A DNA stretch of 64,000 nt from Blastocystis sp. Blastoise (GCA_039096225.1 JBBPEB010000025.1:806001-870000), one strand, 5' to 3'. Positions 7,113 through 64,000 are shown, counted from the stretch's first letter. Notes: generated by a model not told the origin, from the sequence alone. A program made the numbers and translations.

Positions 7113-7180
7113 ATTATCATCTACAATTGTTATTGAAGAATCATTTTGTAGTATCTATTTCATCTTCAATAATCATTGAA

Positions 7181-12419: not shown

Positions 12420-12627
12420 CAGGTTGCCCAATAGAAAAATTCTAATGATAGAATTGACATAATTGATGACTCTAGTAAATTCTCTGTCATGAGAACTATC
12501 AGATAGTGTTCTTGTAATTACCAAGAACATGATGTGAAAACTCATTTAATAGTAGATGCTTAGAAATGGAGACAGCAGTTGCTAAATGTGTCACATACTG
12601 ATTGGTTGCAACTTTTGAACCGCTCAA
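12420..12627 (-). mobile_element. Degenerate hAT element end (TIR ...GCAACTTTTGAACCGCTCAA), with a diverged inverted homologue at ~11040-11150
   Basis: 12605-12627 matches the family TIR. The reverse complement of 12420-12540 shares blocks (CATGACAGAGAA, TGTCAATT, CTATTGG) with 11040-11150. Confidence 0.55.
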
Positions 12628-13461
12628 TTTAATTACAAAAATCGATAGATTGGTGAAATAATATATGCAATATATATATATAAAATTTTACATATTTTTA
12701 ATATTTCTTTTTGCAAACAATATATTAAAGGTATAACTCGTTTTATTGTGATATATAAAAATATATTTAAACAAATAAATTATAAAAAAATGACATTTAC
12801 AATAAAACATCTTGATGTTTACACCAATCAATTAAATAAAGACCTGGAAACGTCTAATCAAATAGTAAAAAAAAAGTGTCTCACGATTATACGTTGATAG
12901 AAACATAGTCTTTAAGAAATTTATATTTTTGTTGTAGAAGTAATATTGTCGAACATCATTTATTGATATAGAGGCACATCGCAAAAGAAATAATAACAGT
13001 AAGAATTGTTGAGAAATGTGTAAATGTAATGAAAAGTAATCATAAATATATTTATAAGCGTCTTTGAATCTGAACAAAACAGAGTTAGCAGTTATAATGA
13101 TGGATAAATGATAAAGAAGCTAATTGCTTTGAGAATGAGCATCTCGTTGCCATGAGAATTGTCTTTTTATATAAAAATTCAGAAATCTCTTTAACATATT
13201 TAGCTCTATTGAAAATAATATAATACTTTTTAATTAGATAAAATAGAAAAAAATTAAGAATCATTTCCAAAAGTCACATGTTAAGAAATCAAAGAAAAGA
13301 TTTGATTGGAGAGAAATTAATTAAGTTTCAAATTTTTATTTTTCTTATGTAGTTGTAGCTAGTTGATTAATTATTTCCTATCTATTTCCCGATATAGTGT
13401 ATATAAATAGAGTTATACATGCATCTAATACTATATTAACATATAGGAAAAAAAAATCAAA

Positions 13462-16400
13462 ATGCAAAATTTCAAAACGGCCATCTTTTTGTTATGGCTA
13501 TTCTTTATTCCAGGCTTTTGCAATGAATTAAATAGCACCAAATCTGTTATTTACAAAAATAAAAATATAAACACGTTTCTTGTTGTTGAACCAGATAATG
13601 AGTACTGTCCACCAGGTATATTTTTATTAAAATTATTCTAATGAAGTTAGGCTCTTATTATGATGGATCTTTATGTATACAATGTCATGATGGTAACTAA
13701 TTACTTAAATATTATTTATTAATTTAGGTTTTTATTCGTCGGAGAGTGTTCCAATGAGCGACGAATACATATCTGACAATTGTCCAGAGTTATGTCCAGA
13801 GTTTTATTATTGTCCAGATGGTATAGTTTATATTTGTTAATTTCTTATAATTTTAGGTACTTCATCGCTTGAATCCGCAATAGAATGTTCAAATGAAGGC
13901 TATTACTGTCCTATAGGATCAAGTAATATCACTGCTGTATATATTTATTGTTTAAACTATAATATTTAGGTTCCAAATGGATATTATGCAAATACAATAT
14001 CAGACGGTATAAAAACGTTATACGGAGATATATCAATATGCAAAAGAGGTATATTTGTAAAGAATATAATATTTATATAAATATAGGACATTATTGTTCA
14101 TCAGGTATACTTAATAAGTGTCCAAAAGGAACATTTAGAACAATTACAGGAGGAAAAACAATAAATGATTGTGAGAAATGTGCAGCCGGCACATATAGTA
14201 CCACTTTAGGAAGATCTACAAAATGTACGTTGAAATGTTTAGAAGGTTATTATTGTTTAGAAGGATCTATATCATCAATTGAAAATGAATGTGGTAATGC
14301 AAATGTATATTGTCCTTTAGGTTCTTCTTCTCCTATTAATGTTCCTTTAGGTTCTTATTCTATTCCTCTTGATGTTAATTCTACAATTCGTTCTAATTTT
14401 GTTATTTGTGAAGAAGGTAATTATTGTATAGAAGGTATTAAATATTCTTGTCCATCTGGTTCTTATGGTAATGAAACTGGTCTTTATAATAATAATTGTA
14501 GTGGTAAATGTTTAGAAGGTTATTATTGTTTAGAAGGATCTATATCATCAATTGAAAATGAATGTGGTAATGCAAATGTATATTGTCCTTTAGGTTCTTC
14601 TTCTCCTATTAATGTTCCTTTAGGTTCTTATTCTATTCCTCTTGATGTTAATTCTACAATTCGTTCTAATTTTGTTATTTGTGAAGAAGGTAATTATTGT
14701 ATAGAAGGTATTAAATATTCTTGTCCATCTGGTTCTTATGGTAATGAAACTGGTCTTTATAATAATAATTGTAGTGGTAAATGTTTAGAAGGTTATTATT
14801 GTTTAGAAGGATCTATATCATCAATTGAAAATGAATGTGGTAATGCAAATGTATATTGTCCTTTAGGTTCTTCTTCTCCTATTAATGTTCCTTTAGGTTC
14901 TTATTCTATTCCTCTTGATGTTAATTCTACAATTCGTTCTAATTTTGTTATTTGTGAAGAAGGTAATTATTGTATAGAAGGTATTAAATATTCTTGTCCA
15001 TCTGGTTCTTATGGTAATGAAACTGGTCTTTATAATAATAATTGTAGTGGTAAATGTTTAGAAGGTTATTATTGTTTAGAAGGATCTATATCATCAATTG
15101 AAAATGAATGTGGTAATGCAAATGTATATTGTCCTTTAGGTTCTTCTTCTCCTATTAATGTTCCTTTAGGTTCTTATTCTATTCCTCTTGATGTTAATTC
15201 TACAATTCGTTCTAATTTTGTTATTTGTGAAGAAGGTAATTATTGTATAGAAGGTATTAAATATTCTTGTCCATCTGGTTCTTATGGTAATGAAACTGGT
15301 CTTTATAATAATAATTGTAGTGGTAAATGTTTAGAAGGTTATTATTGTTTAGAAGGATCTATATCATCAATTGAAAATGAATGTGGTAATGCAAATGTAT
15401 ATTGTCCTTTAGGTTCTTCTTCTCCTATTAATGTTCCTTTAGGTTCTTATTCTATTCCTCTTGATGTTAATTCTACAATTCGTTCTAATTTTGTTATTTG
15501 TGAAGAAGGTAATTATTGTATAGAAGGTATTAAATATTCTTGTCCATCTGGTTCTTATGGTAATGAAACTGGTCTTTATAATAATAATTGTAGTGGTAAA
15601 TGTTTAGAAGGTTATTATTGTTTAGAAGGATCTATATCATCAATTGAAAATGAATGTGGTAATGCAAATGTATATTGTCCTTTAGGTTCTTCTTCTCCTA
15701 TTAATGTTCCTTTAGGTTCTTATTCTATTCCTCTTGATGTTAATTCTACAATTCGTTCTAATTTTGTTATTTGTGAAGAAGGTAATTATTGTATAGAAGG
15801 TATTAAATATTCTTGTCCATCTGGTTCTTATGGTAATGAAACTGGTCTTTATAATAATAATTGTAGTGGTAAATGTTTAGAAGGTTATTATTGTTTAGAA
15901 GGATCTATATCATCAATTGAAAATGAATGTGGTAATGCAAATGTATATTGTCCTTTAGGTTCTTCTTCTCCTATTAATGTTCCTTTAGGTTCTTATTCTA
16001 TTCCTCTTGATGTTAATTCTACAATTCGTTCTAATTTTGTTATTTGTGAAGAAGGTAATTATTGTATAGAAGGTATTAAATATTCTTGTCCATCTGGTTC
16101 TTATGGTAATGAAACTGGTCTTTATAATAATAATTGTAGTGGTAAATGTTTAGAAGGTTATTATTGTTTAGAAGGATCTATATCATCAATTGAAAATGAA
16201 TGTGGTAATGCAAATGTATATTGTCCTTTAGGTTCTTCTTCTCCTATTAATGTTCCTTTAGGTTCTTATTCTATTCCTCTTGATGTTAATTCTACAATTC
16301 GTTCTAATTTTGTTATTTGTGAAGAAGGTAATTATTGTATAGAAGGTATTAAATATTCTTGTCCATCTGGTTCTTATGGTAATGAAACTGGTCTTTATAA

Positions 16401-19400
16401 TAATAATTGTAGTGGTAAATGTTTAGAAGGTTATTATTGTTTAGAAGGATCTATATCATCAATTGAAAATGAATGTGGTAATGCAAATGTATATTGTCCT
16501 TTAGGTTCTTCTTCTCCTATTAATGTTCCTTTAGGTTCTTATTCTATTCCTCTTGATGTTAATTCTACAATTCGTTCTAATTTTGTTATTTGTGAAGAAG
16601 GTAATTATTGTATAGAAGGTATTAAATATTCTTGTCCATCTGGTTCTTATGGTAATGAAACTGGTCTTTATAATAATAATTGTAGTGGTAAATGTTTAGA
16701 AGGTTATTATTGTTTAGAAGGATCTATATCATCAATTGAAAATGAATGTGGTAATGCAAATGTATATTGTCCTTTAGGTTCTTCTTCTCCTATTAATGTT
16801 CCTTTAGGTTCTTATTCTATTCCTCTTGATGTTAATTCTACAATTCGTTCTAATTTTGTTATTTGTGAAGAAGGTAATTATTGTATAGAAGGTATTAAAT
16901 ATTCTTGTCCATCTGGTTCTTATGGTAATGAAACTGGTCTTTATAATAATAATTGTAGTGGTAAATGTTTAGAAGGTTATTATTGTTTAGAAGGATCTAT
17001 ATCATCAATTGAAAATGAATGTGGTAATGCAAATGTATATTGTCCTTTAGGTTCTTCTTCTCCTATTAATGTTCCTTTAGGTTCTTATTCTATTCCTCTT
17101 GATGTTAATTCTACAATTCGTTCTAATTTTGTTATTTGTGAAGAAGGTAATTATTGTATAGAAGGTATTAAATATTCTTGTCCATCTGGTTCTTATGGTA
17201 ATGAAACTGGTCTTTATAATAATAATTGTAGTGGTAAATGTTTAGAAGGTTATTATTGTTTAGAAGGATCTATATCATCAATTGAAAATGAATGTGGTAA
17301 TGCAAATGTATATTGTCCTTTAGGTTCTTCTTCTCCTATTAATGTTCCTTTAGGTTCTTATTCTATTCCTCTTGATGTTAATTCTACAATTCGTTCTAAT
17401 TTTGTTATTTGTGAAGAAGGTAATTATTGTATAGAAGGTATTAAATATTCTTGTCCATCTGGTTCTTATGGTAATGAAACTGGTCTTTATAATAATAATT
17501 GTAGTGGTAAATGTTTAGAAGGTTATTATTGTTTAGAAGGATCTATATCATCAATTGAAAATGAATGTGGTAATGCAAATGTATATTGTCCTTTAGGTTC
17601 TTCTTCTCCTATTAATGTTCCTTTAGGTTCTTATTCTATTCCTCTTGATGTTAATTCTACAATTCGTTCTAATTTTGTTATTTGTGAAGAAGGTAATTAT
17701 TGTATAGAAGGTATTAAATATTCTTGTCCATCTGGTTCTTATGGTAATGAAACTGGTCTTTATAATAATAATTGTAGTGGTAAATGTTTAGAAGGTTATT
17801 ATTGTTTAGAAGGATCTATATCATCAATTGAAAATGAATGTGGTAATGCAAATGTATATTGTCCTTTAGGTTCTTCTTCTCCTATTAATGTTCCTTTAGG
17901 TTCTTATTCTATTCCTCTTGATGTTAATTCTACAATTCGTTCTAATTTTGTTATTTGTGAAGAAGGTAATTATTGTATAGAAGGTATTAAATATTCTTGT
18001 CCATCTGGTTCTTATGGTAATGAAACTGGTCTTTATAATAATAATTGTAGTGGTAAATGTTTAGAAGGTTATTATTGTTTAGAAGGATCTATATCATCAA
18101 TTGAAAATGAATGTGGTAATGCAAATGTATATTGTCCTTTAGGTTCTTCTTCTCCTATTAATGTTCCTTTAGGTTCTTATTCTATTCCTCTTGATGTTAA
18201 TTCTACAATTCGTTCTAGTTTTGTTATTTGTGAAGAAGGTAATTATTGTATAGAAGGTATTAAATATTCTTGTCCATCTGGTTCTTATGGTAATGAAACT
18301 GGTCTTTATAATAATAATTGTAGTGGTAAATGTTTAGAAGGTTATTATTGTTTAGAAGGATCTATATCATCAATTGAAAATGAATGTGGTAATGCAAATG
18401 TATATTGTCCTTTAGGTTCTTCTTCTCCTATTAATGTTCCTTTAGGTTCTTATTCTATTCCTCTTGATGTTAATTCTACAATTCGTTCTAATTTTGTTAT
18501 TTGTGAAGAAGGTAATTATTGTATAGAAGGTATTAAATATTCTTGTCCATCTGGTTCTTATGGTAATGAAACTGGTCTTTATAATAATAATTGTAGTGGT
18601 AAATGTTTAGAAGGTTATTATTGTTTAGAAGGATCTATATCATCAATTGAAAATGAATGTGGTAATGCAAATGTATATTGTCCTTTAGGTTCTTCTTCTC
18701 CTATTAATGTTCCTTTAGGTTCTTATTCTATTCCTCTTGATGTTAATTCTACAATTCGTTCTAATTTTGTTATTTGTGAAGAAGGTAATTATTGTATAGA
18801 AGGTATTAAATATTCTTGTCCATCTGGTTCTTATGGTAATGAAACTGGTCTTTATAATAATAATTGTAGTGGTAAATGTTTAGAAGGTTATTATTGTTTA
18901 GAAGGATCTATATCATCAATTGAAAATGAATGTGGTAATGCAAATGTATATTGTCCTTTAGGTTCTTCTTCTCCTATTAATGTTCCTTTAGGTTCTTATT
19001 CTATTCCTCTTGATGTTAATTCTACAATTCGTTCTAATTTTGTTATTTGTGAAGAAGGTAATTATTGTATAGAAGGTATTAAATATTCTTGTCCATCTGG
19101 TTCTTATGGTAATGAAACTGGTCTTTATAATAATAATTGTAGTGGTAAATGTTTAGAAGGTTATTATTGTTTAGAAGGATCTATATCATCAATTGAAAAT
19201 GAATGTGGTAATGCAAATGTATATTGTCCTTTAGGTTCTTCTTCTCCTATTAATGTTCCTTTAGGTTCTTATTCTATTCCTCTTGATGTTAATTCTACAA
19301 TTCGTTCTAATTTTGTTATTTGTGAAGAAGGTAATTATTGTATAGAAGGTATTAAATATTCTTGTCCATCTGGTTCTTATGGTAATGAAACTGGTCTTTA

Positions 19401-22400
19401 TAATAATAATTGTAGTGGTAAATGTTTAGAAGGTTATTATTGTTTAGAAGGATCTATATCATCAATTGAAAATGAATGTGGTAATGCAAATGTATATTGT
19501 CCTTTAGGTTCTTCTTCTCCTATTAATGTTCCTTTAGGTTCTTATTCTATTCCTCTTGATGTTAATTCTACAATTCGTTCTAATTTTGTTATTTGTGAAG
19601 AAGGTAATTATTGTATAGAAGGTATTAAATATTCTTGTCCATCTGGTTCTTATGGTAATGAAACTGGTCTTTATAATAATAATTGTAGTGGTAAATGTTT
19701 AGAAGGTTATTATTGTTTAGAAGGATCTATATCATCAATTGAAAATGAATGTGGTAATGCAAATGTATATTGTCCTTTAGGTTCTTCTTCTCCTATTAAT
19801 GTTCCTTTAGGTTCTTATTCTATTCCTCTTGATGTTAATTCTACAATTCGTTCTAATTTTGTTATTTGTGAAGAAGGTAATTATTGTATAGAAGGTATTA
19901 AATATTCTTGTCCATCTGGTTCTTATGGTAATGAAACTGGTCTTTATAATAATAATTGTAGTGGTAAATGTTTAGAAGGTTATTATTGTTTAGAAGGATC
20001 TATATCATCAATTGAAAATGAATGTGGTAATGCAAATGTATATTGTCCTTTAGGTTCTTCTTCTCCTATTAATGTTCCTTTAGGTTCTTATTCTATTCCT
20101 CTTGATGTTAATTCTACAATTCGTTCTAATTTTGTTATTTGTGAAGAAGGTAATTATTGTATAGAAGGTATTAAATATTCTTGTCCATCTGGTTCTTATG
20201 GTAATGAAACTGGTCTTTATAATAATAATTGTAGTGGTAAATGTTTAGAAGGTTATTATTGTTTAGAAGGATCTATATCATCAATTGAAAATGAATGTGG
20301 TAATGCAAATGTATATTGTCCTTTAGGTTCTTCTTCTCCTATTAATGTTCCTTTAGGTTCTTATTCTATTCCTCTTGATGTTAATTCTACAATTCGTTCT
20401 AATTTTGTTATTTGTGAAGAAGGTAATTATTGTATAGAAGGTATTAAATATTCTTGTCCATCTGGTTCTTATGGTAATGAAACTGGTCTTTATAATAATA
20501 ATTGTAGTGGTAAATGTTTAGAAGGTTATTATTGTTTAGAAGGATCTATATCATCAATTGAAAATGAATGTGGTAATGCAAATGTATATTGTCCTTTAGG
20601 TTCTTCTTCTCCTATTAATGTTCCTTTAGGTTCTTATTCTATTCCTCTTGATGTTAATTCTACAATTCGTTCTAATTTTGTTATTTGTGAAGAAGGTAAT
20701 TATTGTATAGAAGGTATTAAATATTCTTGTCCATCTGGTTCTTATGGTAATGAAACTGGTCTTTATAATAATAATTGTAGTGGTAAATGTTTAGAAGGTT
20801 ATTATTGTTTAGAAGGATCTATATCATCAATTGAAAATGAATGTGGTAATGCAAATGTATATTGTCCTTTAGGTTCTTCTTCTCCTATTAATGTTCCTTT
20901 AGGTTCTTATTCTATTCCTCTTGATGTTAATTCTACAATTCGTTCTAATTTTGTTATTTGTGAAGAAGGTAATTATTGTATAGAAGGTATTAAATATTCT
21001 TGTCCATCTGGTTCTTATGGTAATGAAACTGGTCTTTATAATAATAATTGTAGTGGTAAATGTTTAGAAGGTTATTATTGTTTAGAAGGATCTATATCAT
21101 CAATTGAAAATGAATGTGGTAATGCAAATGTATATTGTCCTTTAGGTTCTTCTTCTCCTATTAATGTTCCTTTAGGTTCTTATTCTATTCCTCTTGATGT
21201 TAATTCTACAATTCGTTCTAATTTTGTTATTTGTGAAGAAGGTAATTATTGTATAGAAGGTATTAAATATTCTTGTCCATCTGGTTCTTATGGTAATGAA
21301 ACTGGTCTTTATAATAATAATTGTAGTGGTAAATGTTTAGAAGGTTATTATTGTTTAGAAGGATCTATATCATCAATTGAAAATGAATGTGGTAATGCAA
21401 ATGTATATTGTCCTTTAGGTTCTTCTTCTCCTATTAATGTTCCTTTAGGTTCTTATTCTATTCCTCTTGATGTTAATTCTACAATTCGTTCTAATTTTGT
21501 TATTTGTGAAGAAGGTAATTATTGTATAGAAGGTATTAAATATTCTTGTCCATCTGGTTCTTATGGTAATGAAACTGGTCTTTATAATAATAATTGTAGT
21601 GGTAAATGTTTAGAAGGTTATTATTGTTTAGAAGGATCTATATCATCAATTGAAAATGAATGTGGTAATGCAAATGTATATTGTCCTTTAGGTTCTTCTT
21701 CTCCTATTAATGTTCCTTTAGGTTCTTATTCTATTCCTCTTGATGTTAATTCTACAATTCGTTCTAATTTTGTTATTTGTGAAGAAGGTAATTATTGTAT
21801 AGAAGGTATTAAATATTCTTGTCCATCTGGTTCTTATGGTAATGAAACTGGTCTTTATAATAATAATTGTAGTGGTAAATGTTTAGAAGGTTATTATTGT
21901 TTAGAAGGATCTATATCATCAATTGAAAATGAATGTGGTAATGCAAATGTATATTGTCCTTTAGGTTCTTCTTCTCCTATTAATGTTCCTTTAGGTTCTT
22001 ATTCTATTCCTCTTGATGTTAATTCTACAATTCGTTCTAATTTTGTTATTTGTGAAGAAGGTAATTATTGTATAGAAGGTATTAAATATTCTTGTCCATC
22101 TGGTTCTTATGGTAATGAAACTGGTCTTTATAATAATAATTGTAGTGGTAAATGTTTAGAAGGTTATTATTGTTTAGAAGGATCTATATCATCAATTGAA
22201 AATGAATGTGGTAATGCAAATGTATATTGTCCTTTAGGTTCTTCTTCTCCTATTAATGTTCCTTTAGGTTCTTATTCTATTCCTCTTGATGTTAATTCTA
22301 CAATTCGTTCTAATTTTGTTATTTGTGAAGAAGGTAATTATTGTATAGAAGGTATTAAATATTCTTGTCCATCTGGTTCTTATGGTAATGAAACTGGTCT

Positions 22401-25400
22401 TTATAATAATAATTGTAGTGGTAAATGTTTAGAAGGTTATTATTGTTTAGAAGGATCTATATCATCAATTGAAAATGAATGTGGTAATGCAAATGTATAT
22501 TGTCCTTTAGGTTCTTCTTCTCCTATTAATGTTCCTTTAGGTTCTTATTCTATTCCTCTTGATGTTAATTCTACAATTCGTTCTAATTTTGTTATTTGTG
22601 AAGAAGGTAATTATTGTATAGAAGGTATTAAATATTCTTGTCCATCTGGTTCTTATGGTAATGAAACTGGTCTTTATAATAATAATTGTAGTGGTAAATG
22701 TTTAGAAGGTTATTATTGTTTAGAAGGATCTATATCATCAATTGAAAATGAATGTGGTAATGCAAATGTATATTGTCCTTTAGGTTCTTCTTCTCCTATT
22801 AATGTTCCTTTAGGTTCTTATTCTATTCCTCTTGATGTTAATTCTACAATTCGTTCTAATTTTGTTATTTGTGAAGAAGGTAATTATTGTATAGAAGGTA
22901 TTAAATATTCTTGTCCATCTGGTTCTTATGGTAATGAAACTGGTCTTTATAATAATAATTGTAGTGGTAAATGTTTAGAAGGTTATTATTGTTTAGAAGG
23001 ATCTATATCATCAATTGAAAATGAATGTGGTAATGCAAATGTATATTGTCCTTTAGGTTCTTCTTCTCCTATTAATGTTCCTTTAGGTTCTTATTCTATT
23101 CCTCTTGATGTTAATTCTACAATTCGTTCTAATTTTGTTATTTGTGAAGAAGGTAATTATTGTATAGAAGGTATTAAATATTCTTGTCCATCTGGTTCTT
23201 ATGGTAATGAAACTGGTCTTTATAATAATAATTGTAGTGGTAAATGTTTAGAAGGTTATTATTGTTTAGAAGGATCTATATCATCAATTGAAAATGAATG
23301 TGGTAATGCAAATGTATATTGTCCTTTAGGTTCTTCTTCTCCTATTAATGTTCCTTTAGGTTCTTATTCTATTCCTCTTGATGTTAATTCTACAATTCGT
23401 TCTAATTTTGTTATTTGTGAAGAAGGTAATTATTGTATAGAAGGTATTAAATATTCTTGTCCATCTGGTTCTTATGGTAATGAAACTGGTCTTTATAATA
23501 ATAATTGTAGTGGTAAATGTTTAGAAGGTTATTATTGTTTAGAAGGATCTATATCATCAATTGAAAATGAATGTGGTAATGCAAATGTATATTGTCCTTT
23601 AGGTTCTTCTTCTCCTATTAATGTTCCTTTAGGTTCTTATTCTATTCCTCTTGATGTTAATTCTACAATTCGTTCTAATTTTGTTATTTGTGAAGAAGGT
23701 AATTATTGTATAGAAGGTATTAAATATTCTTGTCCATCTGGTTCTTATGGTAATGAAACTGGTCTTTATAATAATAATTGTAGTGGTAAATGTTTAGAAG
23801 GTTATTATTGTTTAGAAGGATCTATATCATCAATTGAAAATGAATGTGGTAATGCAAATGTATATTGTCCTTTAGGTTCTTCTTCTCCTATTAATGTTCC
23901 TTTAGGTTCTTATTCTATTCCTCTTGATGTTAATTCTACAATTCGTTCTAATTTTGTTATTTGTGAAGAAGGTAATTATTGTATAGAAGGTATTAAATAT
24001 TCTTGTCCATCTGGTTCTTATGGTAATGAAACTGGTCTTTATAATAATAATTGTAGTGGTAAATGTTTAGAAGGTTATTATTGTTTAGAAGGATCTATAT
24101 CATCAATTGAAAATGAATGTGGTAATGCAAATGTATATTGTCCTTTAGGTTCTTCTTCTCCTATTAATGTTCCTTTAGGTTCTTATTCTATTCCTCTTGA
24201 TGTTAATTCTACAATTCGTTCTAATTTTGTTATTTGTGAAGAAGGTAATTATTGTATAGAAGGTATTAAATATTCTTGTCCATCTGGTTCTTATGGTAAT
24301 GAAACTGGTCTTTATAATAATAATTGTAGTGGTAAATGTTTAGAAGGTTATTATTGTTTAGAAGGATCTATATCATCAATTGAAAATGAATGTGGTAATG
24401 CAAATGTATATTGTCCTTTAGGTTCTTCTTCTCCTATTAATGTTCCTTTAGGTTCTTATTCTATTCCTCTTGATGTTAATTCTACAATTCGTTCTAATTT
24501 TGTTATTTGTGAAGAAGGTAATTATTGTATAGAAGGTATTAAATATTCTTGTCCATCTGGTTCTTATGGTAATGAAACTGGTCTTTATAATAATAATTGT
24601 AGTGGTAAATGTTTAGAAGGTTATTATTGTTTAGAAGGATCTATATCATCAATTGAAAATGAATGTGGTAATGCAAATGTATATTGTCCTTTAGGTTCTT
24701 CTTCTCCTATTAATGTTCCTTTAGGTTCTTATTCTATTCCTCTTGATGTTAATTCTACAATTCGTTCTAATTTTGTTATTTGTGAAGAAGGTAATTATTG
24801 TATAGAAGGTATTAAATATTCTTGTCCATCTGGTTCTTATGGTAATGAAACTGGTCTTTATAATAATAATTGTAGTGGTAAATGTTTAGAAGGTTATTAT
24901 TGTTTAGAAGGATCTATATCATCAATTGAAAATGAATGTGGTAATGCAAATGTATATTGTCCTTTAGGTTCTTCTTCTCCTATTAATGTTCCTTTAGGTT
25001 CTTATTCTATTCCTCTTGATGTTAATTCTACAATTCGTTCTAATTTTGTTATTTGTGAAGAAGGTAATTATTGTATAGAAGGTATTAAATATTCTTGTCC
25101 ATCTGGTTCTTATGGTAATGAAACTGGTCTTTATAATAATAATTGTAGTGGTAAATGTTTAGAAGGTTATTATTGTTTAGAAGGATCTATATCATCAATT
25201 GAAAATGAATGTGGTAATGCAAATGTATATTGTCCTTTAGGTTCTTCTTCTCCTATTAATGTTCCTTTAGGTTCTTATTCTATTCCTCTTGATGTTAATT
25301 CTACAATTCGTTCTAATTTTGTTATTTGTGAAGAAGGTAATTATTGTATAGAAGGTATTAAATATTCTTGTCCATCTGGTTCTTATGGTAATGAAACTGG

Positions 25401-52400: not shown

Positions 52401-55400
52401 ATCTGGTTCTTATGGTAATGAAACTGGTCTTTATAATAATAATTGTAGTGGTAAATGTTTAGAAGGTTATTATTGTTTAGAAGGATCTATATCATCAATT
52501 GAAAATGAATGTGGTAATGCAAATGTATATTGTCCTTTAGGTTCTTCTTCTCCTATTAATGTTCCTTTAGGTTCTTATTCTATTCCTCTTGATGTTAATT
52601 CTACAATTCGTTCTAATTTTGTTATTTGTGAAGAAGGTAATTATTGTATAGAAGGTATTAAATATTCTTGTCCATCTGGTTCTTATGGTAATGAAACTGG
52701 TCTTTATAATAATAATTGTAGTGGTAAATGTTTAGAAGGTTATTATTGTTTAGAAGGATCTATATCATCAATTGAAAATGAATGTGGTAATGCAAATGTA
52801 TATTGTCCTTTAGGTTCTTCTTCTCCTATTAATGTTCCTTTAGGTTCTTATTCTATTCCTCTTGATGTTAATTCTACAATTCGTTCTAATTTTGTTATTT
52901 GTGAGATCGGTAGTTATTGTATAGAAGGTATTAAATATTCTTGTCCATCTGGTTCTTATGGTAATGAAACTGGTCTTTATAATAATAATTGTAGTGGTAA
53001 ATGTTTAGAAGGTTATTATTGTTTAGAAGGATCTATATCATCAATTGAAAATGAATGTGGTAATGCAAATGTATATTGTCCTTTAGGTTCTTCTTCTCCT
53101 ATTAATGTTCCTTTAGGTTCTTATTCTATTCCTCTTGATGTTAATTCTACAATTCGTTCTAATTTTGTTATTTGTGAAGAAGGTAATTATTGTATAGAAG
53201 GTATTAAATATTCTTGTCCATCTGGTTCTTATGGTAATGAAACTGGTCTTTATAATAATAATTGTAGTGGTAAATGTTTAGAAGGTTATTATTGTTTAGA
53301 AGGATCTATATCATCAATTGAAAATGAATGTGGTAATGCAAATGTATATTGTCCTTTAGGTTCTTCTTCTCCTATTAATGTTCCTTTAGGTTCTTATTCT
53401 ATTCCTCTTGATGTTAATTCTACAATTCGTTCTAATTTTGTTATTTGTGAAGAAGGTAATTATTGTATAGAAGGTATTAAATATTCTTGTCCATCTGGTT
53501 CTTATGGTAATGAAACTGGTCTTTATAATAATAATTGTAGTGGTAAATGTTTAGAAGGTTATTATTGTTTAGAAGGATCTATATCATCAATTGAAAATGA
53601 ATGTGGTAATGCAAATGTATATTGTCCTTTAGGTTCTTCTTCTCCTATTAATGTTCCTTTAGGTTCTTATTCTATTCCTCTTGATGTTAATTCTACAATT
53701 CGTTCTAATTTTGTTATTTGTGAAGAAGGTAATTATTGTATAGAAGGTATTAAATATTCTTGTCCATCTGGTTCTTATGGTAATGAAACTGGTCTTTTAT
53801 AATAATAATTGTAGTGGTAAATGTTTAGAAGGTTATTATTGTTTAGAAGGATCTATATCATCAATTGAAAATGAATGTGGTAATGCAAATGTATATTGTC
53901 CTTTAGGTTCTTCTTCTCCTATTAATGTTCCTTTAGGTTCTTATTCTATTCCTCTTGATGTTAATTCTACAATTCGTTCTAATTTTGTTATTTGTGAAGA
54001 AGGTAATTATTGTATAGAAGGTATTAAATATTCTTGTCCATCTGGTTCTTATGGTAATGAAACTGGTCTTTATAATAATAATTGTAGTGGTAAATGTTTA
54101 GAAGGTTATTATTGTTTAGAAGGATCTATATCATCAATTGAAAATGAATGTGGTAATGCAAATGTATATTGTCCTTTAGGTTCTTCTTCTCCTATTAATG
54201 TTCCTTTAGGTTCTTATTCTATTCCTCTTGATGTTAATTCTACAATTCGTTCTAATTTTGTTATTTGTGAAGAAGGTAATTATTGTATAGAAGGTATTAA
54301 ATATTCTTGTCCATCTGGTTCTTATGGTAATGAAACTGGTCTTTATAATAATAATTGTAGTGGTAAATGTTTAGAAGGTTATTATTGTTTAGAAGGATCT
54401 ATATCATCAATTGAAAATGAATGTGGTAATGCAAATGTATATTGTCCTTTAGGTTCTTCTTCTCCTATTAATGTTCCTTTAGGTTCTTATTCTATTCCTC
54501 TTGATGTTAATTCTACAATTCGTTCTAATTTTGTTATTTGTGAAGAAGGTAATTATTGTATAGAAGGTATTAAATATTCTTGTCCATCTGGTTCTTATGG
54601 TAATGAAACTGGTCTTTATAATAATAATTGTAGTGGTAAATGTTTAGAAGGTTATTATTGTTTAGAAGGATCTATATCATCAATTGAAAATGAATGTGGT
54701 AATGCAAATGTATATTGTCCTTTAGGTTCTTCTTCTCCTATTAATGTTCCTTTAGGTTCTTATTCTATTCCTCTTGATGTTAATTCTACAATTCGTTCTA
54801 ATTTTGTTATTTGTGAAGAAGGTAATTATTGTATAGAAGGTATTAAATATTCTTGTCCATCTGGTTCTTATGGTAATGAAACTGGTCTTTATAATAATAA
54901 TTGTAGTGGTAAATGTTTAGAAGGTTATTATTGTTTAGAAGGATCTATATCATCAATTGAAAATGAATGTGGTAATGCAAATGTATATTGTCCTTTAGGT
55001 TCTTCTTCTCCTATTAATGTTCCTTTAGGTTCTTATTCTATTCCTCTTGATGTTAATTCTACAATTCGTTCTAATTTTGTTATTTGTGAAGAAGGTAATT
55101 ATTGTATAGAAGGTATTAAATATTCTTGTCCATCTGGTTCTTATGGTAATGAAACTGGTCTTTATAATAATAATTGTAGTGGTAAATGTTTAGAAGGTTA
55201 TTATTGTTTAGAAGGATCTATATCATCAATTGAAAATGAATGTGGTAATGCAAATGTATATTGTCCTTTAGGTTCTTCTTCTCCTATTAATGTTCCTTTA
55301 GGTTCTTATTCTATTCCTCTTGATGTTAATTCTACAATTCGTTCTAATTTTGTTATTTGTGAAGAAGGTAATTATTGTATAGAAGGTATTAAATATTCTT

Positions 55401-58400
55401 GTCCATCTGGTTCTTATGGTAATGAAACTGGTCTTTATAATAATAATTGTAGTGGTAAATGTTTAGAAGGTTATTATTGTTTAGAAGGATCTATATCATC
55501 AATTGAAAATGAATGTGGTAATGCAAATGTATATTGTCCTTTAGGTTCTTCTTCTCCTATTAATGTTCCTTTAGGTTCTTATTCTATTCCTCTTGATGTT
55601 AATTCTACAATTCGTTCTAATTTTGTTATTTGTGAAGAAGGTAATTATTGTATAGAAGGTATTAAATATTCTTGTCCATCTGGTTCTTATGGTAATGAAA
55701 CTGGTCTTTATAATAATAATTGTAGTGGTAAATGTTTAGAAGGTTATTATTGTTTAGAAGGATCTATATCATCAATTGAAAATGAATGTGGTAATGCAAA
55801 TGTATATTGTCCTTTAGGTTCTTCTTCTCCTATTAATGTTCCTTTAGGTTCTTATTCTATTCCTCTTGATGTTAATTCTACAATTCGTTCTAATTTTGTT
55901 ATTTGTGAAGAAGGTAATTATTGTATAGAAGGTATTAAATATTCTTGTCCATCTGGTTCTTATGGTAATGAAACTGGTCTTTATAATAATAATTGTAGTG
56001 GTAAATGTTTAGAAGGTTATTATTGTTTAGAAGGATCTATATCATCAATTGAAAATGAATGTGGTAATGCAAATGTATATTGTCCTTTAGGTTCTTCTTC
56101 TCCTATTAATGTTCCTTTAGGTTCTTATTCTATTCCTCTTGATGTTAATTCTACAATTCGTTCTAATTTTGTTATTTGTGAAGAAGGTAATTATTGTATA
56201 GAAGGTATTAAATATTCTTGTCCATCTGGTTCTTATGGTAATGAAACTGGTCTTTATAATAATAATTGTAGTGGTAAATGTTTAGAAGGTTATTATTGTT
56301 TAGAAGGATCTATATCATCAATTGAAAATGAATGTGGTAATGCAAATGTATATTGTCCTTTAGGTTCTTCTTCTCCTATTAATGTTCCTTTAGGTTCTTA
56401 TTCTATTCCTCTTGATGTTAATTCTACAATTCGTTCTAATTTTGTTATTTGTGAAGAAGGTAATTATTGTATAGAAGGTATTAAATATTCTTGTCCATCT
56501 GGTTCTTATGGTAATGAAACTGGTCTTTATAATAATAATTGTAGTGGTAAATGTTTAGAAGGTTATTATTGTTTAGAAGGATCTATATCATCAATTGAAA
56601 ATGAATGTGGTAATGCAAATGTATATTGTCCTTTAGGTTCTTCTTCTCCTATTAATGTTCCTTTAGGTTCTTATTCTATTCCTCTTGATGTTAATTCTAC
56701 AATTCGTTCTAATTTTGTTATTTGTGAAGAAGGTAATTATTGTATAGAAGGTATTAAATATTCTTGTCCATCTGGTTCTTATGGTAATGAAACTGGTCTT
56801 TATAATAATAATTGTAGTGGTAAATGTTTAGAAGGTTATTATTGTTTAGAAGGATCTATATCATCAATTGAAAATGAATGTGGTAATGCAAATGTATATT
56901 GTCCTTTAGGTTCTTCTTCTCCTATTAATGTTCCTTTAGGTTCTTATTCTATTCCTCTTGATGTTAATTCTACAATTCGTTCTAATTTTGTTATTTGTGA
57001 AGAAGGTAATTATTGTATAGAAGGTATTAAATATTCTTGTCCATCTGGTTCTTATGGTAATGAAACTGGTCTTTATAATAATAATTGTAGTGGTAAATGT
57101 TTAGAAGGTTATTATTGTTTAGAAGGATCTATATCATCAATTGAAAATGAATGTGGTAATGCAAATGTATATTGTCCTTTAGGTTCTTCTTCTCCTATTA
57201 ATGTTCCTTTAGGTTCTTATTCTATTCCTCTTGATGTTAATTCTACAATTCGTTCTAATTTTGTTATTTGTGAAGAAGGTAATTATTGTATAGAAGGTAT
57301 TAAATATTCTTGTCCATCTGGTTCTTATGGTAATGAAACTGGTCTTTATAATAATAATTGTAGTGGTAAATGTTTAGAAGGTTATTATTGTTTAGAAGGA
57401 TCTATATCATCAATTGAAAAATGAATGTGGTAATGCAAATGTATATTGTCCTTTAGGTTCTTCTTCTCCTATTAATGTTCCTTTAGGTTCTTATTCTATT
57501 CCTCTTGATGTTAATTCTACAATTCGTTCTAATTTTGTTATTTGTGAAGAAGGTAATTATTGTATAGAAGGTATTAAATATTCTTGTCCATCTGGTTCTT
57601 ATGGTAATGAAACTGGTCTTTATAATAATAATTGTAGTGGTAAATGTTTAGAAGGTTATTATTGTTTAGAAGGATCTATATCATCAATTGAAAATGAATG
57701 TGGTAATGCAAATGTATATTGTCCTTTAGGTTCTTCTTCTCCTATTAATGTTCCTTTAGGTTCTTATTCTATTCCTCTTGATGTTAATTCTACAATTCGT
57801 TCTAATTTTGTTATTTGTGAAGAAGGTAATTATTGTATAGAAGGTATTAAATATTCTTGTCCATCTGGTTCTTATGGTAATGAAACTGGTCTTTATAATA
57901 ATAATTGTAGTGGTAAATGTTTAGAAGGTTATTATTGTTTAGAAGGATCTATATCATCAATTGAAAATGAATGTGGTAATGCAAATGTATATTGTCCTTT
58001 AGGTTCTTCTTCTCCTATTAATGTTCCTTTAGGTTCTTATTCTATTCCTCTTGATGTTAATTCTACAATTCGTTCTAATTTTGTTATTTGTGAAGAAGGT
58101 AATTATTGTATAGAAGGTATTAAATATTCTTGTCCATCTGGTTCTTATGGTAATGAAACTGGTCTTTATAATAATAATTGTAGTGGTAAATGTTTAGAAG
58201 GTTATTATTGTTTAGAAGGATCTATATCATCAATTGAAAATGAATGTGGTAATGCAAATGTATATTGTCCTTTAGGTTCTTCTTCTCCTATTAATGTTCC
58301 TTTAGGTTCTTATTCTATTCCTCTTGATGTTAATTCTACAATTCGTTCTAATTTTGTTATTTGTGAAGAAGGTAATTATTGTATAGAAGGTATTAAATAT

Positions 58401-61400: not shown

Positions 61401-64000
61401 TATTCTTGTCCATCTGGTTCTTATGGTAATGAAACTGGTCTTTATAATAATAATTGTAGTGGTAAATGTTTAGAAGGTTATTATTGTTTAGAAGGATCTA
61501 TATCATCAATTGAAAATGAATGTGGTAATGCAAATGTATATTGTCCTTTAGGTTCTTCTTCTCCTATTAATGTTCCTTTAGGTTCTTATTCTATTCCTCT
61601 TGATGTTAATTCTACAATTCGTTCTAATTTTGTTATTTGTGAAGAAGGTAATTATTGTATAGAAGGTATTAAATATTCTTGTCCATCTGGTTCTTATGGT
61701 AATGAAACTGGTCTTTATAATAATAATTGTAGTGGTAAATGTTTAGAAGGTTATTATTGTTTAGAAGGATCTATATCATCAATTGAAAATGAATGTGGTA
61801 ATGCAAATGTATATTGTCCTTTAGGTTCTTCTTCTCCTATTAATGTTCCTTTAGGTTCTTATTCTATTCCTCTTGATGTTAATTCTACAATTCGTTCTAA
61901 TTTTGTTATTTGTGAAGAAGGTAATTATTGTATAGAAGGTATTAAATATTCTTGTCCATCTGGTTCTTATGGTAATGAAACTGGTCTTTATAATAATAAT
62001 TGTAGTGGTAAATGTTTAGAAGGTTATTATTGTTTAGAAGGATCTATATCATCAATTGAAAATGAATGTGGTAATGCAAATGTATATTGTCCTTTAGGTT
62101 CTTCTTCTCCTATTAATGTTCCTTTAGGTTCTTATTCTATTCCTCTTGATGTTAATTCTACAATTCGTTCTAATTTTGTTATTTGTGAAGAAGGTAATTA
62201 TTGTATAGAAGGTATTAAATATTCTTGTCCATCTGGTTCTTATGGTAATGAAACTGGTCTTTATAATAATAATTGTAGTGGTAAATGTTTAGAAGGTTAT
62301 TATTGTTTAGAAGGATCTATATCATCAATTGAAAATGAATGTGGTAATGCAAATGTATATTGTCCTTTAGGTTCTTCTTCTCCTATTAATGTTCCTTTAG
62401 GTTCTTATTCTATTCCTCTTGATGTTAATTCTACAATTCGTTCTAATTTTGTTATTTGTGAAGAAGGTAATTATTGTATAGAAGGTATTAAATATTCTTG
62501 TCCATCTGGTTCTTATGGTAATGAAACTGGTCTTTATAATAATAATTGTAGTGGTAAATGTTTAGAAGGTTATTATTGTTTAGAAGGATCTATATCATCA
62601 ATTGAAAATGAATGTGGTAATGCAAATGTATATTGTCCTTTAGGTTCTTCTTCTCCTATTAATGTTCCTTTAGGTTCTTATTCTATTCCTCTTGATGTTA
62701 ATTCTACAATTCGTTCTAATTTTGTTATTTGTGAAGAAGGTAATTATTGTATAGAAGGTATTAAATATTCTTGTCCATCTGGTTCTTATGGTAATGAAAC
62801 TGGTCTTTATAATAATAATTGTAGTGGTAAATGTTTAGAAGGTTATTATTGTTTAGAAGGATCTATATCATCAATTGAAAATGAATGTGGTAATGCAAAT
62901 GTATATTGTCCTTTAGGTTCTTCTTCTCCTATTAATGTTCCTTTAGGTTCTTATTCTATTCCTCTTGATGTTAATTCTACAATTCGTTCTAATTTTGTTA
63001 TTTGTGAAGAAGGTAATTATTGTATAGAAGGTATTAAATATTCTTGTCCATCTGGTTCTTATGGTAATGAAACTGGTCTTTATAATAATAATTGTAGTGG
63101 TAAATGTTTAGAAGGTTATTATTGTTTAGAAGGATCTATATCATCAATTGAAAATGAATGTGGTAATGCAAATGTATATTGTCCTTTAGGTTCTTCTTCT
63201 CCTATTAATGTTCCTTTAGGTTCTTATTCTATTCCTCTTGATGTTAATTCTACAATTCGTTCTAATTTTGTTATTTGTGAAGAAGGTAATTATTGTATAG
63301 AAGGTATTAAATATTCTTGTCCATCTGGTTCTTATGGTAATGAAACTGGTCTTTATAATAATAATTGTAGTGGTAAATGTTTAGAAGGTTATTATTGTTT
63401 AGAAGGATCTATATCATCAATTGAAAATGAATGTGGTAATGCAAATGTATATTGTCCTTTAGGTTCTTCTTCTCCTATTAATGTTCCTTTAGGTTCTTAT
63501 TCTATTCCTCTTGATGTTAATTCTACAATTCGTTCTAATTTTGTTATTTGTGAAGAAGGTAATTATTGTATAGAAGGTATTAAATATTCTTGTCCATCTG
63601 GTTCTTATGGTAATGAAACTGGTCTTTATAATAATAATTGTAGTGGTAAATGTTTAGAAGGTTATTATTGTTTAGAAGGATCTATATCATCAATTGAAAA
63701 TGAATGTGGTAATGCAAATGTATATTGTCCTTTAGGTTCTTCTTCTCCTATTAATGTTCCTTTAGGTTCTTATTCTATTCCTCTTGATGTTAATTCTACA
63801 ATTCGTTCTAATTTTGTTATTTGTGAAGAAGGTAATTATTGTATAGAAGGTATTAAATATTCTTGTCCATCTGGTTCTTATGGTAATGAAACTGGTCTTT
63901 ATAATAATAATTGTAGTGGTAAATGTTTAGAAGGTTATTATTGTTTAGAAGGATCTATATCATCAATTGAAAATGAATGTGGTAATGCAAATGTATATTG
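13462..64000 (+). CDS. Giant secreted/surface cysteine-rich repeat protein (CxxGxYC, ephrin-receptor-like/GCC2-GCC3-type modules), >=~16,800 aa, 3' end outside the window
   Basis: ATG at 13462 begins a signal-peptide-like MQNFKTAIFLLWLFFIPGFC. Introns at 13616-13650, 13693-13727, 13821-13856, 13937-13969 and 14049-14086 (33-38 nt, GT-AG) splice in frame into the exon starting at 14087, which is the frame of ORF 14038-53802. The frame is broken only by +1 T (53795-53798) and +1 A (57417-57421). After the second break the repeat frame stays open to 64000. Confidence 0.85.
14233..64000 (+). repeat. Coding tandem array, 273-bp/91-aa unit x ~182, near-perfect identity
   Basis: Unit KCLEGYYCLEGSISSIENECGNANVYCPLGSSSPINVPLGSYSIPLDVNSTIRSNFVICEEGNYCIEGIKYSCPSGSYGNETGLYNNNCSG. 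The 60-nt display lines recur every 5460 nt (20 x 273). 49,768/273 = ~182.3 copies. Confidence 0.98.

What the first reader, a model, noticed from the sequence alone, without database searches (positions are those of the whole stretch)
13462..64000. Titin-scale secreted protein built from ~182+ identical 8-cysteine modules
Seen: a signal-peptide exon is spliced through five tiny introns onto a 273-bp unit repeated about 182 times, still open at the window end (>=~16,800 aa, well over 1.5 MDa). Each unit has 8 Cys, three N-glycosylation sequons (NST, NET, NCS), 9 acidic versus 3 basic residues, and no Met, Trp, His or Gln. Established: CxxGxYC modules form disulfide-bonded extracellular rods in ephrin-receptor-like/GCC2-GCC3 repeat proteins and in protist wall and surface proteins, where repeats are normally diverged. 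Inference: this could be an undescribed, very long glycosylated filament for a surface coat or cyst wall, with length set by array copy number.
Basis: partly seen in the sequence, partly recalled or inferred. Interest (0 to 1): 0.9.

Follow-up and report, generated by a model that had tools for sequence, protein, structure and literature searches.

The report
Unresolved giant cysteine-module repeat genes
A very AT-rich gut protist (most likely the tortoise Blastocystis strain Rus-B) has two genes that each run from a secretion signal into more than 50 kb of nearly identical 273-base repeats encoding a disulfide-rich rod module; this could be a micrometre-long surface filament, but both arrays run off the ends of their contigs, so their length, their 3' ends and whether they are expressed are all unknown.

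Summary
The repeat is real in the assembly. It has a 273-bp unit, starts at window 14233, and 178 of its 182 full copies in the window are identical. A signal-peptide exon joins the array in frame through five 33-38-nt introns.

Three points change the picture:
- The frame is not open to the window end. Two 1-bp homopolymer insertions (about 53795 and 57417) close the literal ORF at 53802.
- The contig ends inside the array 3.6 kb past the window. No contig in the 34-contig assembly starts with the array or carries it in reverse, so no 3' end exists.
- A second contig (C34) also ends in the same array (215 copies). It is entered in a different unit phase from a different signal-peptide gene.

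The module belongs to a very large, mostly stramenopile family (3,145 cluster representatives). Pfam misses the unit. Relatives are named ephrin-receptor-like, and a confident AlphaFold model best matches the disulfide-ladder tandem of the Chlamydomonas mastigoneme protein MST1. A human Blastocystis strain has a bounded 23-kb array of the same family.

Verdict: a real, probably coding giant repeat gene pair. It is a new variant of a known kind. Copy number and expression remain untested.

The parts
13462..13615 (+). Exon 1 of gene A: start codon, hydrophobic signal-like N-terminus, first Cys-rich stretch
   Evidence: Frame-consistent splice model with GT..AG borders; sequence read
13616..13650 (+). 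Intron 1 (35 nt, GTATAT..TTAG)
13651..13692 (+). Exon 2
13693..13727 (+). Intron 2 (35 nt)
13728..13820 (+). Exon 3; its end aligns to the unit boundary region of the repeat module
13821..13856 (+). Intron 3 (36 nt)
13857..13936 (+). Exon 4; 55% identical to unit residues 14-33 (diverged module copy)
13937..13969 (+). Intron 4 (33 nt)
13970..14048 (+). Exon 5
14049..14086 (+). Intron 5 (38 nt)
14087..14232 (+). Start of the last exon: diverged half-module (39% identical to unit residues 63-98), unique in the genome, runs in frame into the array
   Evidence: weak NCD3G match
14233..64000 (+). Tandem array of the 273-bp / 91-aa module, 182.3 copies in the window; continues 3,592 bp to the end of contig C18 (195.46 copies in all)
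18218..18218 (+). Single A-to-G change (Asn to Ser) in unit 15
52904..52914 (+). Patch of five changed bases in unit 142 (EEGN to EIGS)
53795..53795 (+). Extra T in a T run (274-bp unit): +1 frameshift; literal ORF stops at 53802
57417..57417 (+). Extra A in an A run (274-bp unit): second +1 frameshift; the same unit position also carries an extra A in the C34 array

Best explanation
SHOWN
- Two non-allelic genes each consist of a signal-peptide exon, a short intron-rich region of diverged cysteine modules, and an intron-less, almost perfectly homogeneous tandem array of one 91-aa module. Gene A lies in this window on contig C18. Gene B lies on contig C34.
- The genome is most likely Blastocystis sp. 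Rus-B from a Russian tortoise.
- The module has eight conserved Cys in a long and a short CxxGxYC half. It belongs to a large, mainly stramenopile branch of the ephrin-receptor-like / TNFR-like cysteine-rich repeats.
- Its predicted fold is a straight stack of disulfide-bonded hairpins, most like the 'Sushi'/CRD tandem of the mastigoneme filament protein MST1.
- Both contigs stop inside the array and nothing in the assembly leaves it.

INFERRED
- The arrays are real and at least about 53 and 59 kb long. A Nanopore/Flye assembly extends a contig into an unbridged repeat only as far as anchored reads reach, so these figures are most simply lower bounds.
- The four 1-bp homopolymer insertions are residual R9 Nanopore errors. 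Each gene then encodes a secreted, acidic, N-glycosylated rod of about 18,000-20,000 aa (about 2 MDa before glycans).
- At about 11 Å per disulfide rung, as in MST1, and four rungs per module, such a rod would be roughly 1 µm long.
- The identity of the arrays within and between loci comes from very recent unequal crossing-over and ectopic exchange between the two loci. The different entry phases mark the crossover points. Consensus polishing of reads that cannot be placed may exaggerate this identity.
- The most likely role is a long extracellular spacer or fibril, for example in the filamentous surface coat, with its length set by copy number.
For: - Array anatomy and identity.
- In-frame splice models with signal-like N-termini for both genes.
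- Only one open frame of six.
- The two arrays carry different error patterns and end in different unit phases, so they were assembled separately.
- An unrelated public run holds two contigs 100% identical to the unit, while the single-copy flanks are uncovered. This fits a high-copy element.
- Family: 3,145 representatives at E<=1e-3, 464 at E<=1e-30, 35-50% identity. The 91-aa period recurs in relatives.
- Fold: pLDDT 98.2; MST1 Z 9.2 with rmsd 2.8 Å over 163 residues; PF07699 clusters at TM 0.64-0.68.
- Blastocystis sp. DL has a bounded 312-bp x 74 array (23 kb) of the same family inside a 1.2-Mb contig, with diverged modules in frame on both sides.
- The assembly method (R9 MinION, Flye --meta, racon, PolyPolish, POLCA) and the matching genome statistics are in PMC12129017.
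- The MST1 disulfide ladder (about 11 Å spacing) and its likeness to the ephrin CRD are in PMC10602792.
- The surface coat is described as loose fibrils and is poorly characterised: PMC6115916.
Against: - No 3' end, stop codon, anchor or terminator is known for either gene.
- The literal sequence is frameshifted. Gene A closes at 53802. Gene B closes in its second unit.
- No RNA or peptide evidence exists. The only public run found is low depth and of unknown type.
- Copy number was not measured independently.
- Perfect identity of about 410 units could be partly a polishing artefact.
- The open frame of identical copies counts as one observation, not 410.
- The unit itself gets no Pfam match and no sequence match in the PDB.
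- The rod length and the coat role rest on analogy only.
Confidence: 0.55

Rival explanations
1. The arrays are real DNA but are no longer translated as giant proteins. A coding module was amplified into a satellite-like block at two loci, perhaps at chromosome ends. The frameshifts are real, so gene A ends at 53802 (about 13,400 aa at most) and gene B after about 300 aa. The rest is non-coding repeat.
For: - Four 1-bp insertions survived three short-read polishing tools (methods).
- Both arrays lie at contig ends with no exit.
- Identical copies give no evidence of purifying selection.
- I retrieved no gene model or protein for it, although own-genome records may be hidden by the tools.
Against: - All insertions are in homopolymer runs, two of them at the same unit position. 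This is typical of R9 error.
- There are only 2 substitution events in 410 units and no stop-creating substitutions.
- Both junctions with the upstream exons are in frame.
- The DL relative keeps diverged coding modules in frame on both sides of its array.
Confidence: 0.2
2. Assembly artefact. The true arrays are much shorter, or there is a single array. Flye extended two contigs into one unresolved repeat edge, or chimeric or misplaced reads inflated it, so the copy numbers (195 and 215) mean nothing.
For: - Both contigs end in the array and no contig leaves it.
- A perfect tandem repeat longer than most reads cannot be sized by assembly.
- Read depth could not be checked.
Against: - The two arrays differ in length, end phase and error positions, so they are not one appended edge.
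- Their entries are distinct, in-frame junctions in two different genes.
- An independent run contains the unit at 100% identity while lacking the flanks.
- A bounded 23-kb array of the family exists in another strain.
- Long-read assemblers usually collapse unbridged tandem arrays and seldom inflate them (general knowledge).
Confidence: 0.12
3. The product is translated but is not a free filament. It would be the enormously extended ectodomain of a membrane protein such as an adhesin, receptor or channel-linked stalk, anchored by a C-terminal transmembrane region missing from the assembly.
For: - Long relatives combine N-terminal modules with C-terminal multi-pass membrane regions: P0002 has about 10 hydrophobic segments; P0005 has five TIG domains plus a weak TRP-like region; P0015, P0025 and P0151 are similar.
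- The Chlamydomonas mastigoneme is itself attached to the PKD2 channel (title and abstract of PMC7265326).
Against: - A search of this genome with the membrane region of P0002 found nothing.
- Only 6 of 150 top relatives have a hydrophobic segment in the last 150 residues.
- The C-terminus of this gene is simply unknown.
Confidence: 0.25

Closest known systems
Stramenopile 91-aa eight-cysteine repeat proteins (for example Saprolegnia parasitica SPRG_08886, which UniRef names 'Tyrosine-protein kinase ephrin type A/B receptor-like domain-containing protein'; also Aphanomyces, Phytophthora, Thalassiosira, Triparma, Mallomonas and MAST transcripts)
   Same: Clear sequence homology: 43% identity over two modules, E down to 1e-139. 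The 91-aa period is the same and all eight Cys are conserved.
   Different: Relatives have about 3-12 diverged modules, often joined to other domains. Here a single module is repeated about 200 times with almost no variation.
Blastocystis sp. DL (ST3) hypothetical protein KAK8815864.1 and its locus
   Same: It is the best database hit (46% identity, 83 matched stretches). It also contains a homogeneous tandem array of the family inside a gene with diverged modules at its edges, and its frame is also interrupted in a Nanopore assembly.
   Different: The unit is 312 bp (two 52-aa sub-repeats). The array has 74 copies in 23 kb with 97% matches, and unique sequence bounds it on both sides within one contig. 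The annotated model starts and ends inside the repeat.
Chlamydomonas reinhardtii mastigoneme protein MST1 (PDB 8wa2, 9b4h, 8tx1), 'Sushi'/CRD tandem SDd-SDf
   Same: It is the best structural match to the two-module model: Z 9.2, rmsd 2.8 Å, 163 aligned residues, MST1 residues about 1595-1813. It is an extracellular, glycosylated, disulfide-ladder rod that builds a filament (PMC10602792).
   Different: Identity is only 20-22%, and the family profile finds no PDB sequence match. MST1 has six such domains plus nine Ig-like domains and a polyproline-II helix, none of which is seen here. Blastocystis has no flagella or hairs (PMC12129017).
Pfam PF07699 Ephrin_rec_like (GCC2_GCC3), ELAPOR1, and NCD3G / TNFR cysteine-rich domains
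   Same: The hairpin-stack fold is similar: ELAPOR1 Z 7.6, CaSR CRD Z 5.5, Eph CRD Z 4.2-4.9. Atlas clusters with PF07699 reach TM 0.64-0.68. Language-model neighbours carry PF07699, DUF8003 and NCD3G.
   Different: The unit gets no PF07699 match at E<=1. Close relatives reach only 16-30 bits against a cut-off of 23.1.
Giant repeat adhesins with near-identical spacer modules, for example the about 1.5-MDa Marinomonas primoryensis ice-binding adhesin with about 120 identical 104-aa repeats (from my own knowledge, not tested here)
   Same: The design principle is the same: about a hundred or more identical copies of a roughly 100-aa rigid extracellular module whose number sets the reach of the protein.
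   Different: It is a bacterial, calcium-stabilised Ig-like fold secreted by a type I system. There is no homology, and the comparison is by analogy only.

Membership tests
Pfam PF07699 Ephrin_rec_like (GCC2_GCC3) | Match to the Pfam profile at or above the gathering score (23.1 bits) | tested here: not met
   Three units scanned with max E 1 gave no PF07699 row. Homologues P0172, P0234, P0249 and P0254 reach 24-30 bits, and P0070 reaches 16 bits.
Pfam PF07699 Ephrin_rec_like (GCC2_GCC3) | Fold of the Eph-receptor cysteine-rich domain (disulfide-bonded beta-hairpin stack) | tested here: met
   AF2 model pLDDT 98.2. EphA2/A4/B2 CRD Z 4.2-4.9 over about 50 residues, and ELAPOR1 Z 7.6 over 83 residues. 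PF07699 Atlas clusters TM 0.64-0.68 over 161-167 residues.
Pfam PF07699 Ephrin_rec_like (GCC2_GCC3) | Secretory or extracellular context | tested here: inconclusive
   In-frame exon 1 has a hydrophobic N-terminus, and there are three N-x-S/T sequons per unit. No signal-peptide predictor was available and there is no experimental evidence.
Stramenopile 91-aa eight-Cys module family (unnamed) | Significant sequence similarity over the whole module, with the eight Cys conserved | tested here: met
   phmmer found 464 representatives at E<=1e-30. In the alignment of 48 two-module stretches, every Cys column is invariant or at least 90% conserved. A 91-residue spacing is seen in P0002 and P0005.
Mastigoneme protein MST1 type | CRD/'Sushi' tandem that superposes on MST1 SDd-SDf | tested here: met
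   8wa2_E Z 9.2, rmsd 2.8 Å, 163 residues. 9b4h_A Z 8.9. 8tx1 Z 7.7.
Mastigoneme protein MST1 type | Nine Ig-like domains, a polyproline-II helix and a C-terminal helix (architecture from PMC10602792) | tested here: not met
   The 198 aa before the array hold only signal and Cys modules. The array is a single module type. The C-terminus is absent from the assembly, so a PPII tail cannot be excluded.
Mastigoneme protein MST1 type | Detectable sequence homology to MST1 | tested here: not met
   A profile of alignment A1 against all PDB chain sequences gave 0 matches at E<=1.
Titin-scale single polypeptide (more than 15,000 aa) | One uninterrupted reading frame with a defined start and stop | tested here: not met
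   The literal ORF closes at 53802 after a +1 insertion. There is no stop or 3' end because contig C18 ends inside the array.
Titin-scale single polypeptide (more than 15,000 aa) | Transcript and protein of that size observed | not testable with these tools
   Only one low-share run kept as contigs was offered.

The most novel reading that the evidence does not exclude
Blastocystis, a stramenopile that lost its flagella and flagellar hairs, builds the loose fibrils of its surface coat from micrometre-long, about 2-MDa disulfide-ladder glycoprotein rods. These rods are structurally akin to the mastigoneme shaft protein. They are encoded by two loci that share one concertedly evolving array, and the array either faces itself (convergent genes) or runs to chromosome ends. 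Coat thickness would then be tuned by gain and loss of repeat copies.
Probability: 0.15. Interest if true: 0.8.

Novelty: new variant of a known kind. Interest (0 to 1): 0.55.

Why it matters
- If the arrays are translated, these would be among the largest known eukaryotic proteins, and an unusually pure case of protein length set by tandem copy number.
- They would give a first molecular candidate for the filamentous surface coat of Blastocystis. That coat varies between strains and is thought to affect interactions with bacteria and hosts, but its proteins are unknown.
- The finding marks two unresolved ends in an otherwise near-complete reference assembly.
- It points to a large, Pfam-invisible branch of ephrin-receptor-like repeats across stramenopiles that now has a confident structural model.
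- If the arrays are untranslated or inflated, the finding is an assembly caveat and a module-derived satellite. That is of modest interest.

Tried and rejected
- Single-sequence AlphaFold of three units gave pLDDT 28 and was unusable. It was replaced by a run with alignment A1.
- A DNA search of the own genome with two units could not be scored because there were too many candidates. A protein search with the unit was flooded by array copies.
- To find the other 215 copies I fetched all 34 contig starts and the ends of contigs C19-C34. The ends of C1-C17 were not fetched, but the pattern search reports 0 reverse-strand copies genome-wide.
- Read evidence was thin. One run was offered (share 0.05, Logan contigs, type guessed). 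It gave two short contigs identical to the unit but no usable depth, strand or RNA information. Copy number and expression remain untested.
- An exact 38-mer of the unit found nothing in the JGI metagenome contigs.
- A search of the own genome for a C-terminal membrane region like that of relative P0002 found nothing.
- The profile of A1 against PDB sequences found nothing.
- I rejected Sushi/CCP as a family. The Pfam Sushi and Hyd_WA hits on P0001 have no individually significant stretch.
- The hAT-like ORF upstream gave no Pfam match.
- An automatic minimal-intron splice search gave wrong models. I replaced it with manually placed GTA..TAG introns checked for frame.
- The spliced exons were joined only inside those two scripts, to check the reading frame.


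Full report
OBSERVATION

Tandem Repeats Finder reports a single array of period 273 from window 14233 to 64000, with 182.3 copies and 99% matches. I re-phased the array on a 25-base anchor. Of the 182 full units, 178 are identical to each other. The four exceptions are:
- an A-to-G change at 18218 (Asn to Ser);
- a patch of five changed bases at 52904-52914 (EEGN to EIGS);
- two 274-bp units with one extra base in a homopolymer, TTT to TTTT at about 53795 and AAAA to AAAAA at about 57417.

The unit translates to 91 residues with 8 Cys, 9 acidic and 3 basic residues. It has no Met, Trp, His or Gln, and it carries three N-x-S/T sequons (NST, NET, NCS). Its predicted pI is 4.1 and its mass 9.7 kDa. 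Only one of the six frames is open; the others carry 5-17 stops per unit. At this base composition, 91 open codons have a chance of about 6.5e-4.

Upstream, I placed five introns of 33-38 nt with GTA..TAG borders. They connect an ATG at 13462 to the array in frame. This gives 198 residues, starting with a hydrophobic signal-like segment and containing 15 Cys. Taken exon by exon, exons 3, 4 and 6 align to parts of the unit at 39-55% identity. They are therefore a diverged, intron-bearing copy of the module.

The statement that the frame is still open at the window end is not literally correct. The first insertion closes the ORF at 53802, so the longest literal ORF is 14038..53802, or 13,254 codons.

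WHERE THE ARRAY ENDS

The window is G000:C18:806001-870000. Contig C18 is 873,592 bp long and ends in the middle of a unit. The array is therefore 53,360 bp, or 195.46 copies, and it has no 3' end.

A 32-base pattern from the unit occurs 411 times in the genome, always on the forward strand and never on the reverse. I fetched the first 1.5 kb of all 34 contigs and the last 1.5 kb of contigs C19-C34. No contig starts with the array. Contig C34 (1,025,233 bp) also ends in it.

The C34 array begins at 966545 and spans 58,689 bp, or 214.98 copies. Of its 214 full units, 212 are identical to the C18 consensus. The other two carry 1-bp insertions, one of them at the same A run as in C18. The array is entered at about unit position 183, from a different gene.
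- That gene has an ATG at C34:965804, a signal-like N-terminus, seven exons and six introns of 36-43 nt.
- It has 169 residues and 13 Cys before the array, and the junction is in frame.
- Apart from the array, the 16 kb upstream in C34 shares nothing with the 14 kb upstream in the window.
- The exon just before the array in the window is unique in the genome.

The assembly therefore contains two entries into the same array and no exit. The two copies were assembled separately, because they differ in length, in end phase and in the positions of their errors.

ORGANISM AND ASSEMBLY

Earlier notes of this scan call the genome a tortoise-gut Blastocystis. I could check this only indirectly:
- G000 has 33,340,088 bp in 34 contigs. 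The window has 22-28% GC and short, variable introns.
- Table 1 of PMC12129017 lists Blastocystis sp. Rus-B (Russian tortoise) with 33 scaffolds, 33.3 Mb and 23.1% GC. It also reports longer, variable introns in the tortoise isolates.
- The best protein hit is a Blastocystis protein.

According to that paper, Rus-B was sequenced on an R9 MinION flow cell. It was assembled with Flye --meta and polished with racon, PolyPolish and POLCA. This explains two features. Homopolymer insertions are the typical residual error of that chemistry. A perfect repeat longer than the reads leaves contigs that stop inside it. It also means that reads inside the array cannot be placed, so polishing pulls every copy toward the consensus. 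The near-perfect identity is therefore not fully trustworthy.

READ EVIDENCE

Only one public run was offered. It holds 5% of the sampled words, is kept as Logan contigs, and its type is a guess. When laid on window 11000-16900, it gave two contigs of 118 and 135 nt. Both are 100% identical to the unit, at k-mer depth 2-3. It gave nothing on the single-copy 5' region apart from pieces resembling dispersed repeats.

This shows the unit exists in an independent data set, and it fits a high-copy element in an organism present at very low coverage. It gives no copy number and no evidence of transcription.

WHAT THE MODULE IS

Pfam finds nothing significant in the unit, and in particular no PF07699 at E<=1. 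An exhaustive phmmer search with two units found 3,145 cluster representatives at E<=1e-3 and 464 at E<=1e-30. They are 35-50% identical and many have numerous matched stretches.
- Named members come from Blastocystis sp. DL, oomycetes (Saprolegnia, Aphanomyces, Phytophthora, Lagenidium, Achlya), diatoms, Triparma, Laminaria, Mallomonas and MAST transcriptomes.
- UniRef names several of them 'Tyrosine-protein kinase ephrin type A/B receptor-like domain-containing protein'. Their own PF07699 matches are marginal, at 16-30 bits against a cut-off of 23.1.
- Two modules align to Saprolegnia SPRG_08886 at 43% identity without large gaps.
- The 91-residue spacing recurs in relatives.
- In an alignment of 48 two-module stretches, every Cys column is invariant or at least 90% conserved.

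With that alignment, AlphaFold2 gives a very confident model with mean pLDDT 98.2 and pTM 0.86. The single-sequence run had failed.
- The best solved matches are the three structures of the Chlamydomonas mastigoneme protein MST1, over residues about 1595-1813. VIA-align gives Z 9.2, rmsd 2.8 Å and 163 aligned residues, covering the whole model.
- Next come ELAPOR1 (Z 7.6), the cysteine-rich domain of the calcium-sensing and sweet receptors (about 5.5), and Eph-receptor CRDs (4.2-4.9).
- Among ESM Atlas models, unnamed oomycete and diatom clusters match best (TM 0.81-0.86). PF07699 clusters follow at TM 0.64-0.68.
- The MST1 paper describes this region as a tandem of 'Sushi' domains highly similar to the ephrin-receptor CRD. 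It forms a ladder of disulfides about 11 Å apart that stiffens an extracellular glycoprotein filament (PMC10602792).

A BOUNDED RELATIVE

The best hit is KAK8815864.1 of Blastocystis sp. DL (ST3). It is 4,710 aa long and has 89 near-full matches at a 52-residue spacing. The model both starts and ends inside the repeat.

Its locus holds a 312-bp array of 73.8 copies (23 kb, 97% matches) inside a 1.2-Mb contig. Diverged modules continue in frame on both sides of the array. As here, the frame is interrupted a few times.

This shows that internal homogeneous arrays of this family occur elsewhere in the genus, and it makes a pure artefact less likely. It also suggests that the Rus-B genes should have a 3' part with diverged modules, which the assembly lacks.

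Other long relatives combine N-terminal modules with TIG domains and C-terminal multi-pass membrane regions. A search of this genome with one such membrane region found nothing.

HOW IT MOST LIKELY WORKS

Shown:
- two signal-peptide genes run in frame into a homogeneous array of a conserved eight-Cys module;
- the module's confident predicted fold is a disulfide-bonded hairpin stack.

Inferred:
- The arrays are real, and their lengths are lower bounds.
- The insertions are errors.
- Each gene then encodes an acidic secreted rod. Gene A would be about 17,984 aa (1.9 MDa) and gene B about 19,731 aa (2.1 MDa), each counted to its contig end. Each would carry about 590-650 N-glycan sites.
- With four disulfide rungs per module at the MST1 spacing, each module adds roughly 4-5 nm, so about 200 modules give roughly 1 µm. 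This is arithmetic by analogy, not a measurement.
- Unequal crossing-over would set the copy number, and ectopic exchange between the two loci would keep the arrays identical. The two different entry phases look like crossover points within homologous modules.

Two arrangements would explain 'two entries, no exit'. The genes may be convergent, with the arrays meeting head to head; the reverse complement has 6-9 stops per unit in every frame. Alternatively, both arrays may run toward chromosome ends whose distal pieces were lost from the assembly. I could not distinguish these.

The surface coat of Blastocystis is described as a filamentous layer of loose fibrils. Its thickness varies between isolates and its proteins are unknown (PMC6115916; PMC5608401). 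That makes it the obvious candidate location, but nothing here tests it.

RIVALS

- The arrays may be real DNA that is no longer translated in full. The frameshifts would then be real, and gene B would stop in its second unit.
- The copy numbers may be assembly artefacts.
- The product may be the stalk of a membrane-anchored protein and not a free fibril.

I weigh these at about 0.2, 0.12 and 0.25. The last overlaps with the main reading because it differs only in the missing C-terminus.

NOVELTY AND VERDICT

The module family, the fold, and the idea of repeat-number-defined giant surface proteins are all known. The source paper does not mention 'cysteine' at all, and it uses 'surface' and 'repeat' only in other contexts. 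I found no description of this family in Blastocystis in the papers searched.

What is unusual is the scale and purity. About 410 copies (112 kb, 0.34% of the genome) lie at two loci, with only two substitution events. I class it as a new variant of a known kind.

Interest is moderate at 0.55. The size claim is striking and would give a concrete candidate for an uncharacterised cell structure. It rests, however, on an unresolved assembly region, with frameshifts, no 3' end and no expression data.

PROCEDURE

Spliced exons were joined only inside scripts to check the frame. All database and fold queries used single exons or array stretches by reference.

Noticed in passing
G000 contig C34:965804-1025233 (loci L052-L054, L056-L059): A second giant gene. 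It has a different signal-peptide N-terminus, seven exons and six introns of 36-43 nt. It then runs into 214.98 copies of the same 273-bp unit up to the contig end, entering at about unit position 183. A 1-bp insertion already in its second full unit breaks the literal frame.
   Followed up: yes
L052:3097-4806, minus strand (C34:963097-964806): A divergently oriented neighbour of gene B encodes at least one module of the same family, followed by other Cys-rich sequence. This is a local paralogue cluster.
   Followed up: partly
L055:10024-33044 (Blastocystis sp. DL, JBBPED010000033.1): A 312-bp x 73.8 tandem array of the same family, next to ORC4 and MCM7 genes. The deposited gene model KAK8815864.1 starts and ends inside the repeat and covers only part of it. 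The frame is interrupted at about 21556, 24181 and 29778.
   Followed up: partly
window 5137-9784: A 476-codon ORF (7181-8611, minus strand) is bracketed by inverted clusters of the 10-11-bp motif AAAGTTGCGAC (5137-7066 forward, 8618-9784 reverse complement). This looks like a DNA transposon with subterminal repeats.
   Followed up: partly
window about 1984-2800: An exon of an S1/P1 nuclease gene (Pfam PF02265, E 1e-9), interrupted by simple TA and 12-bp repeats.
   Followed up: partly
Proteins P0002, P0005, P0015, P0025, P0151 (relatives from metagenomes and Logan assemblies): In long relatives the modules form the N-terminal ectodomain of proteins with 5-10 C-terminal hydrophobic segments. 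P0005 also has five TIG/IPT domains and a weak TRP-channel-like match. This recalls the PKD2-mastigoneme link in Chlamydomonas.
   Followed up: partly
Contig ends (L009, L021, L031, L034, L035, L041, L042, L045, L047; L043): Nine of the 51 contig ends I read carry TTAGGG/CCCTAA telomere repeats; a tenth, the start of C19 (L002), shows only a degenerate trace. The end of C27 (49 kb) carries the start of an SSU rRNA gene. C18 and C34 have no telomere at their other ends.
   Followed up: no
window 16619-16811 (run X1): An unrelated public run from 2023 (97 Mb, type uncertain) contains two short contigs 100% identical to the unit, but nothing from the adjacent single-copy gene start.
   Followed up: partly
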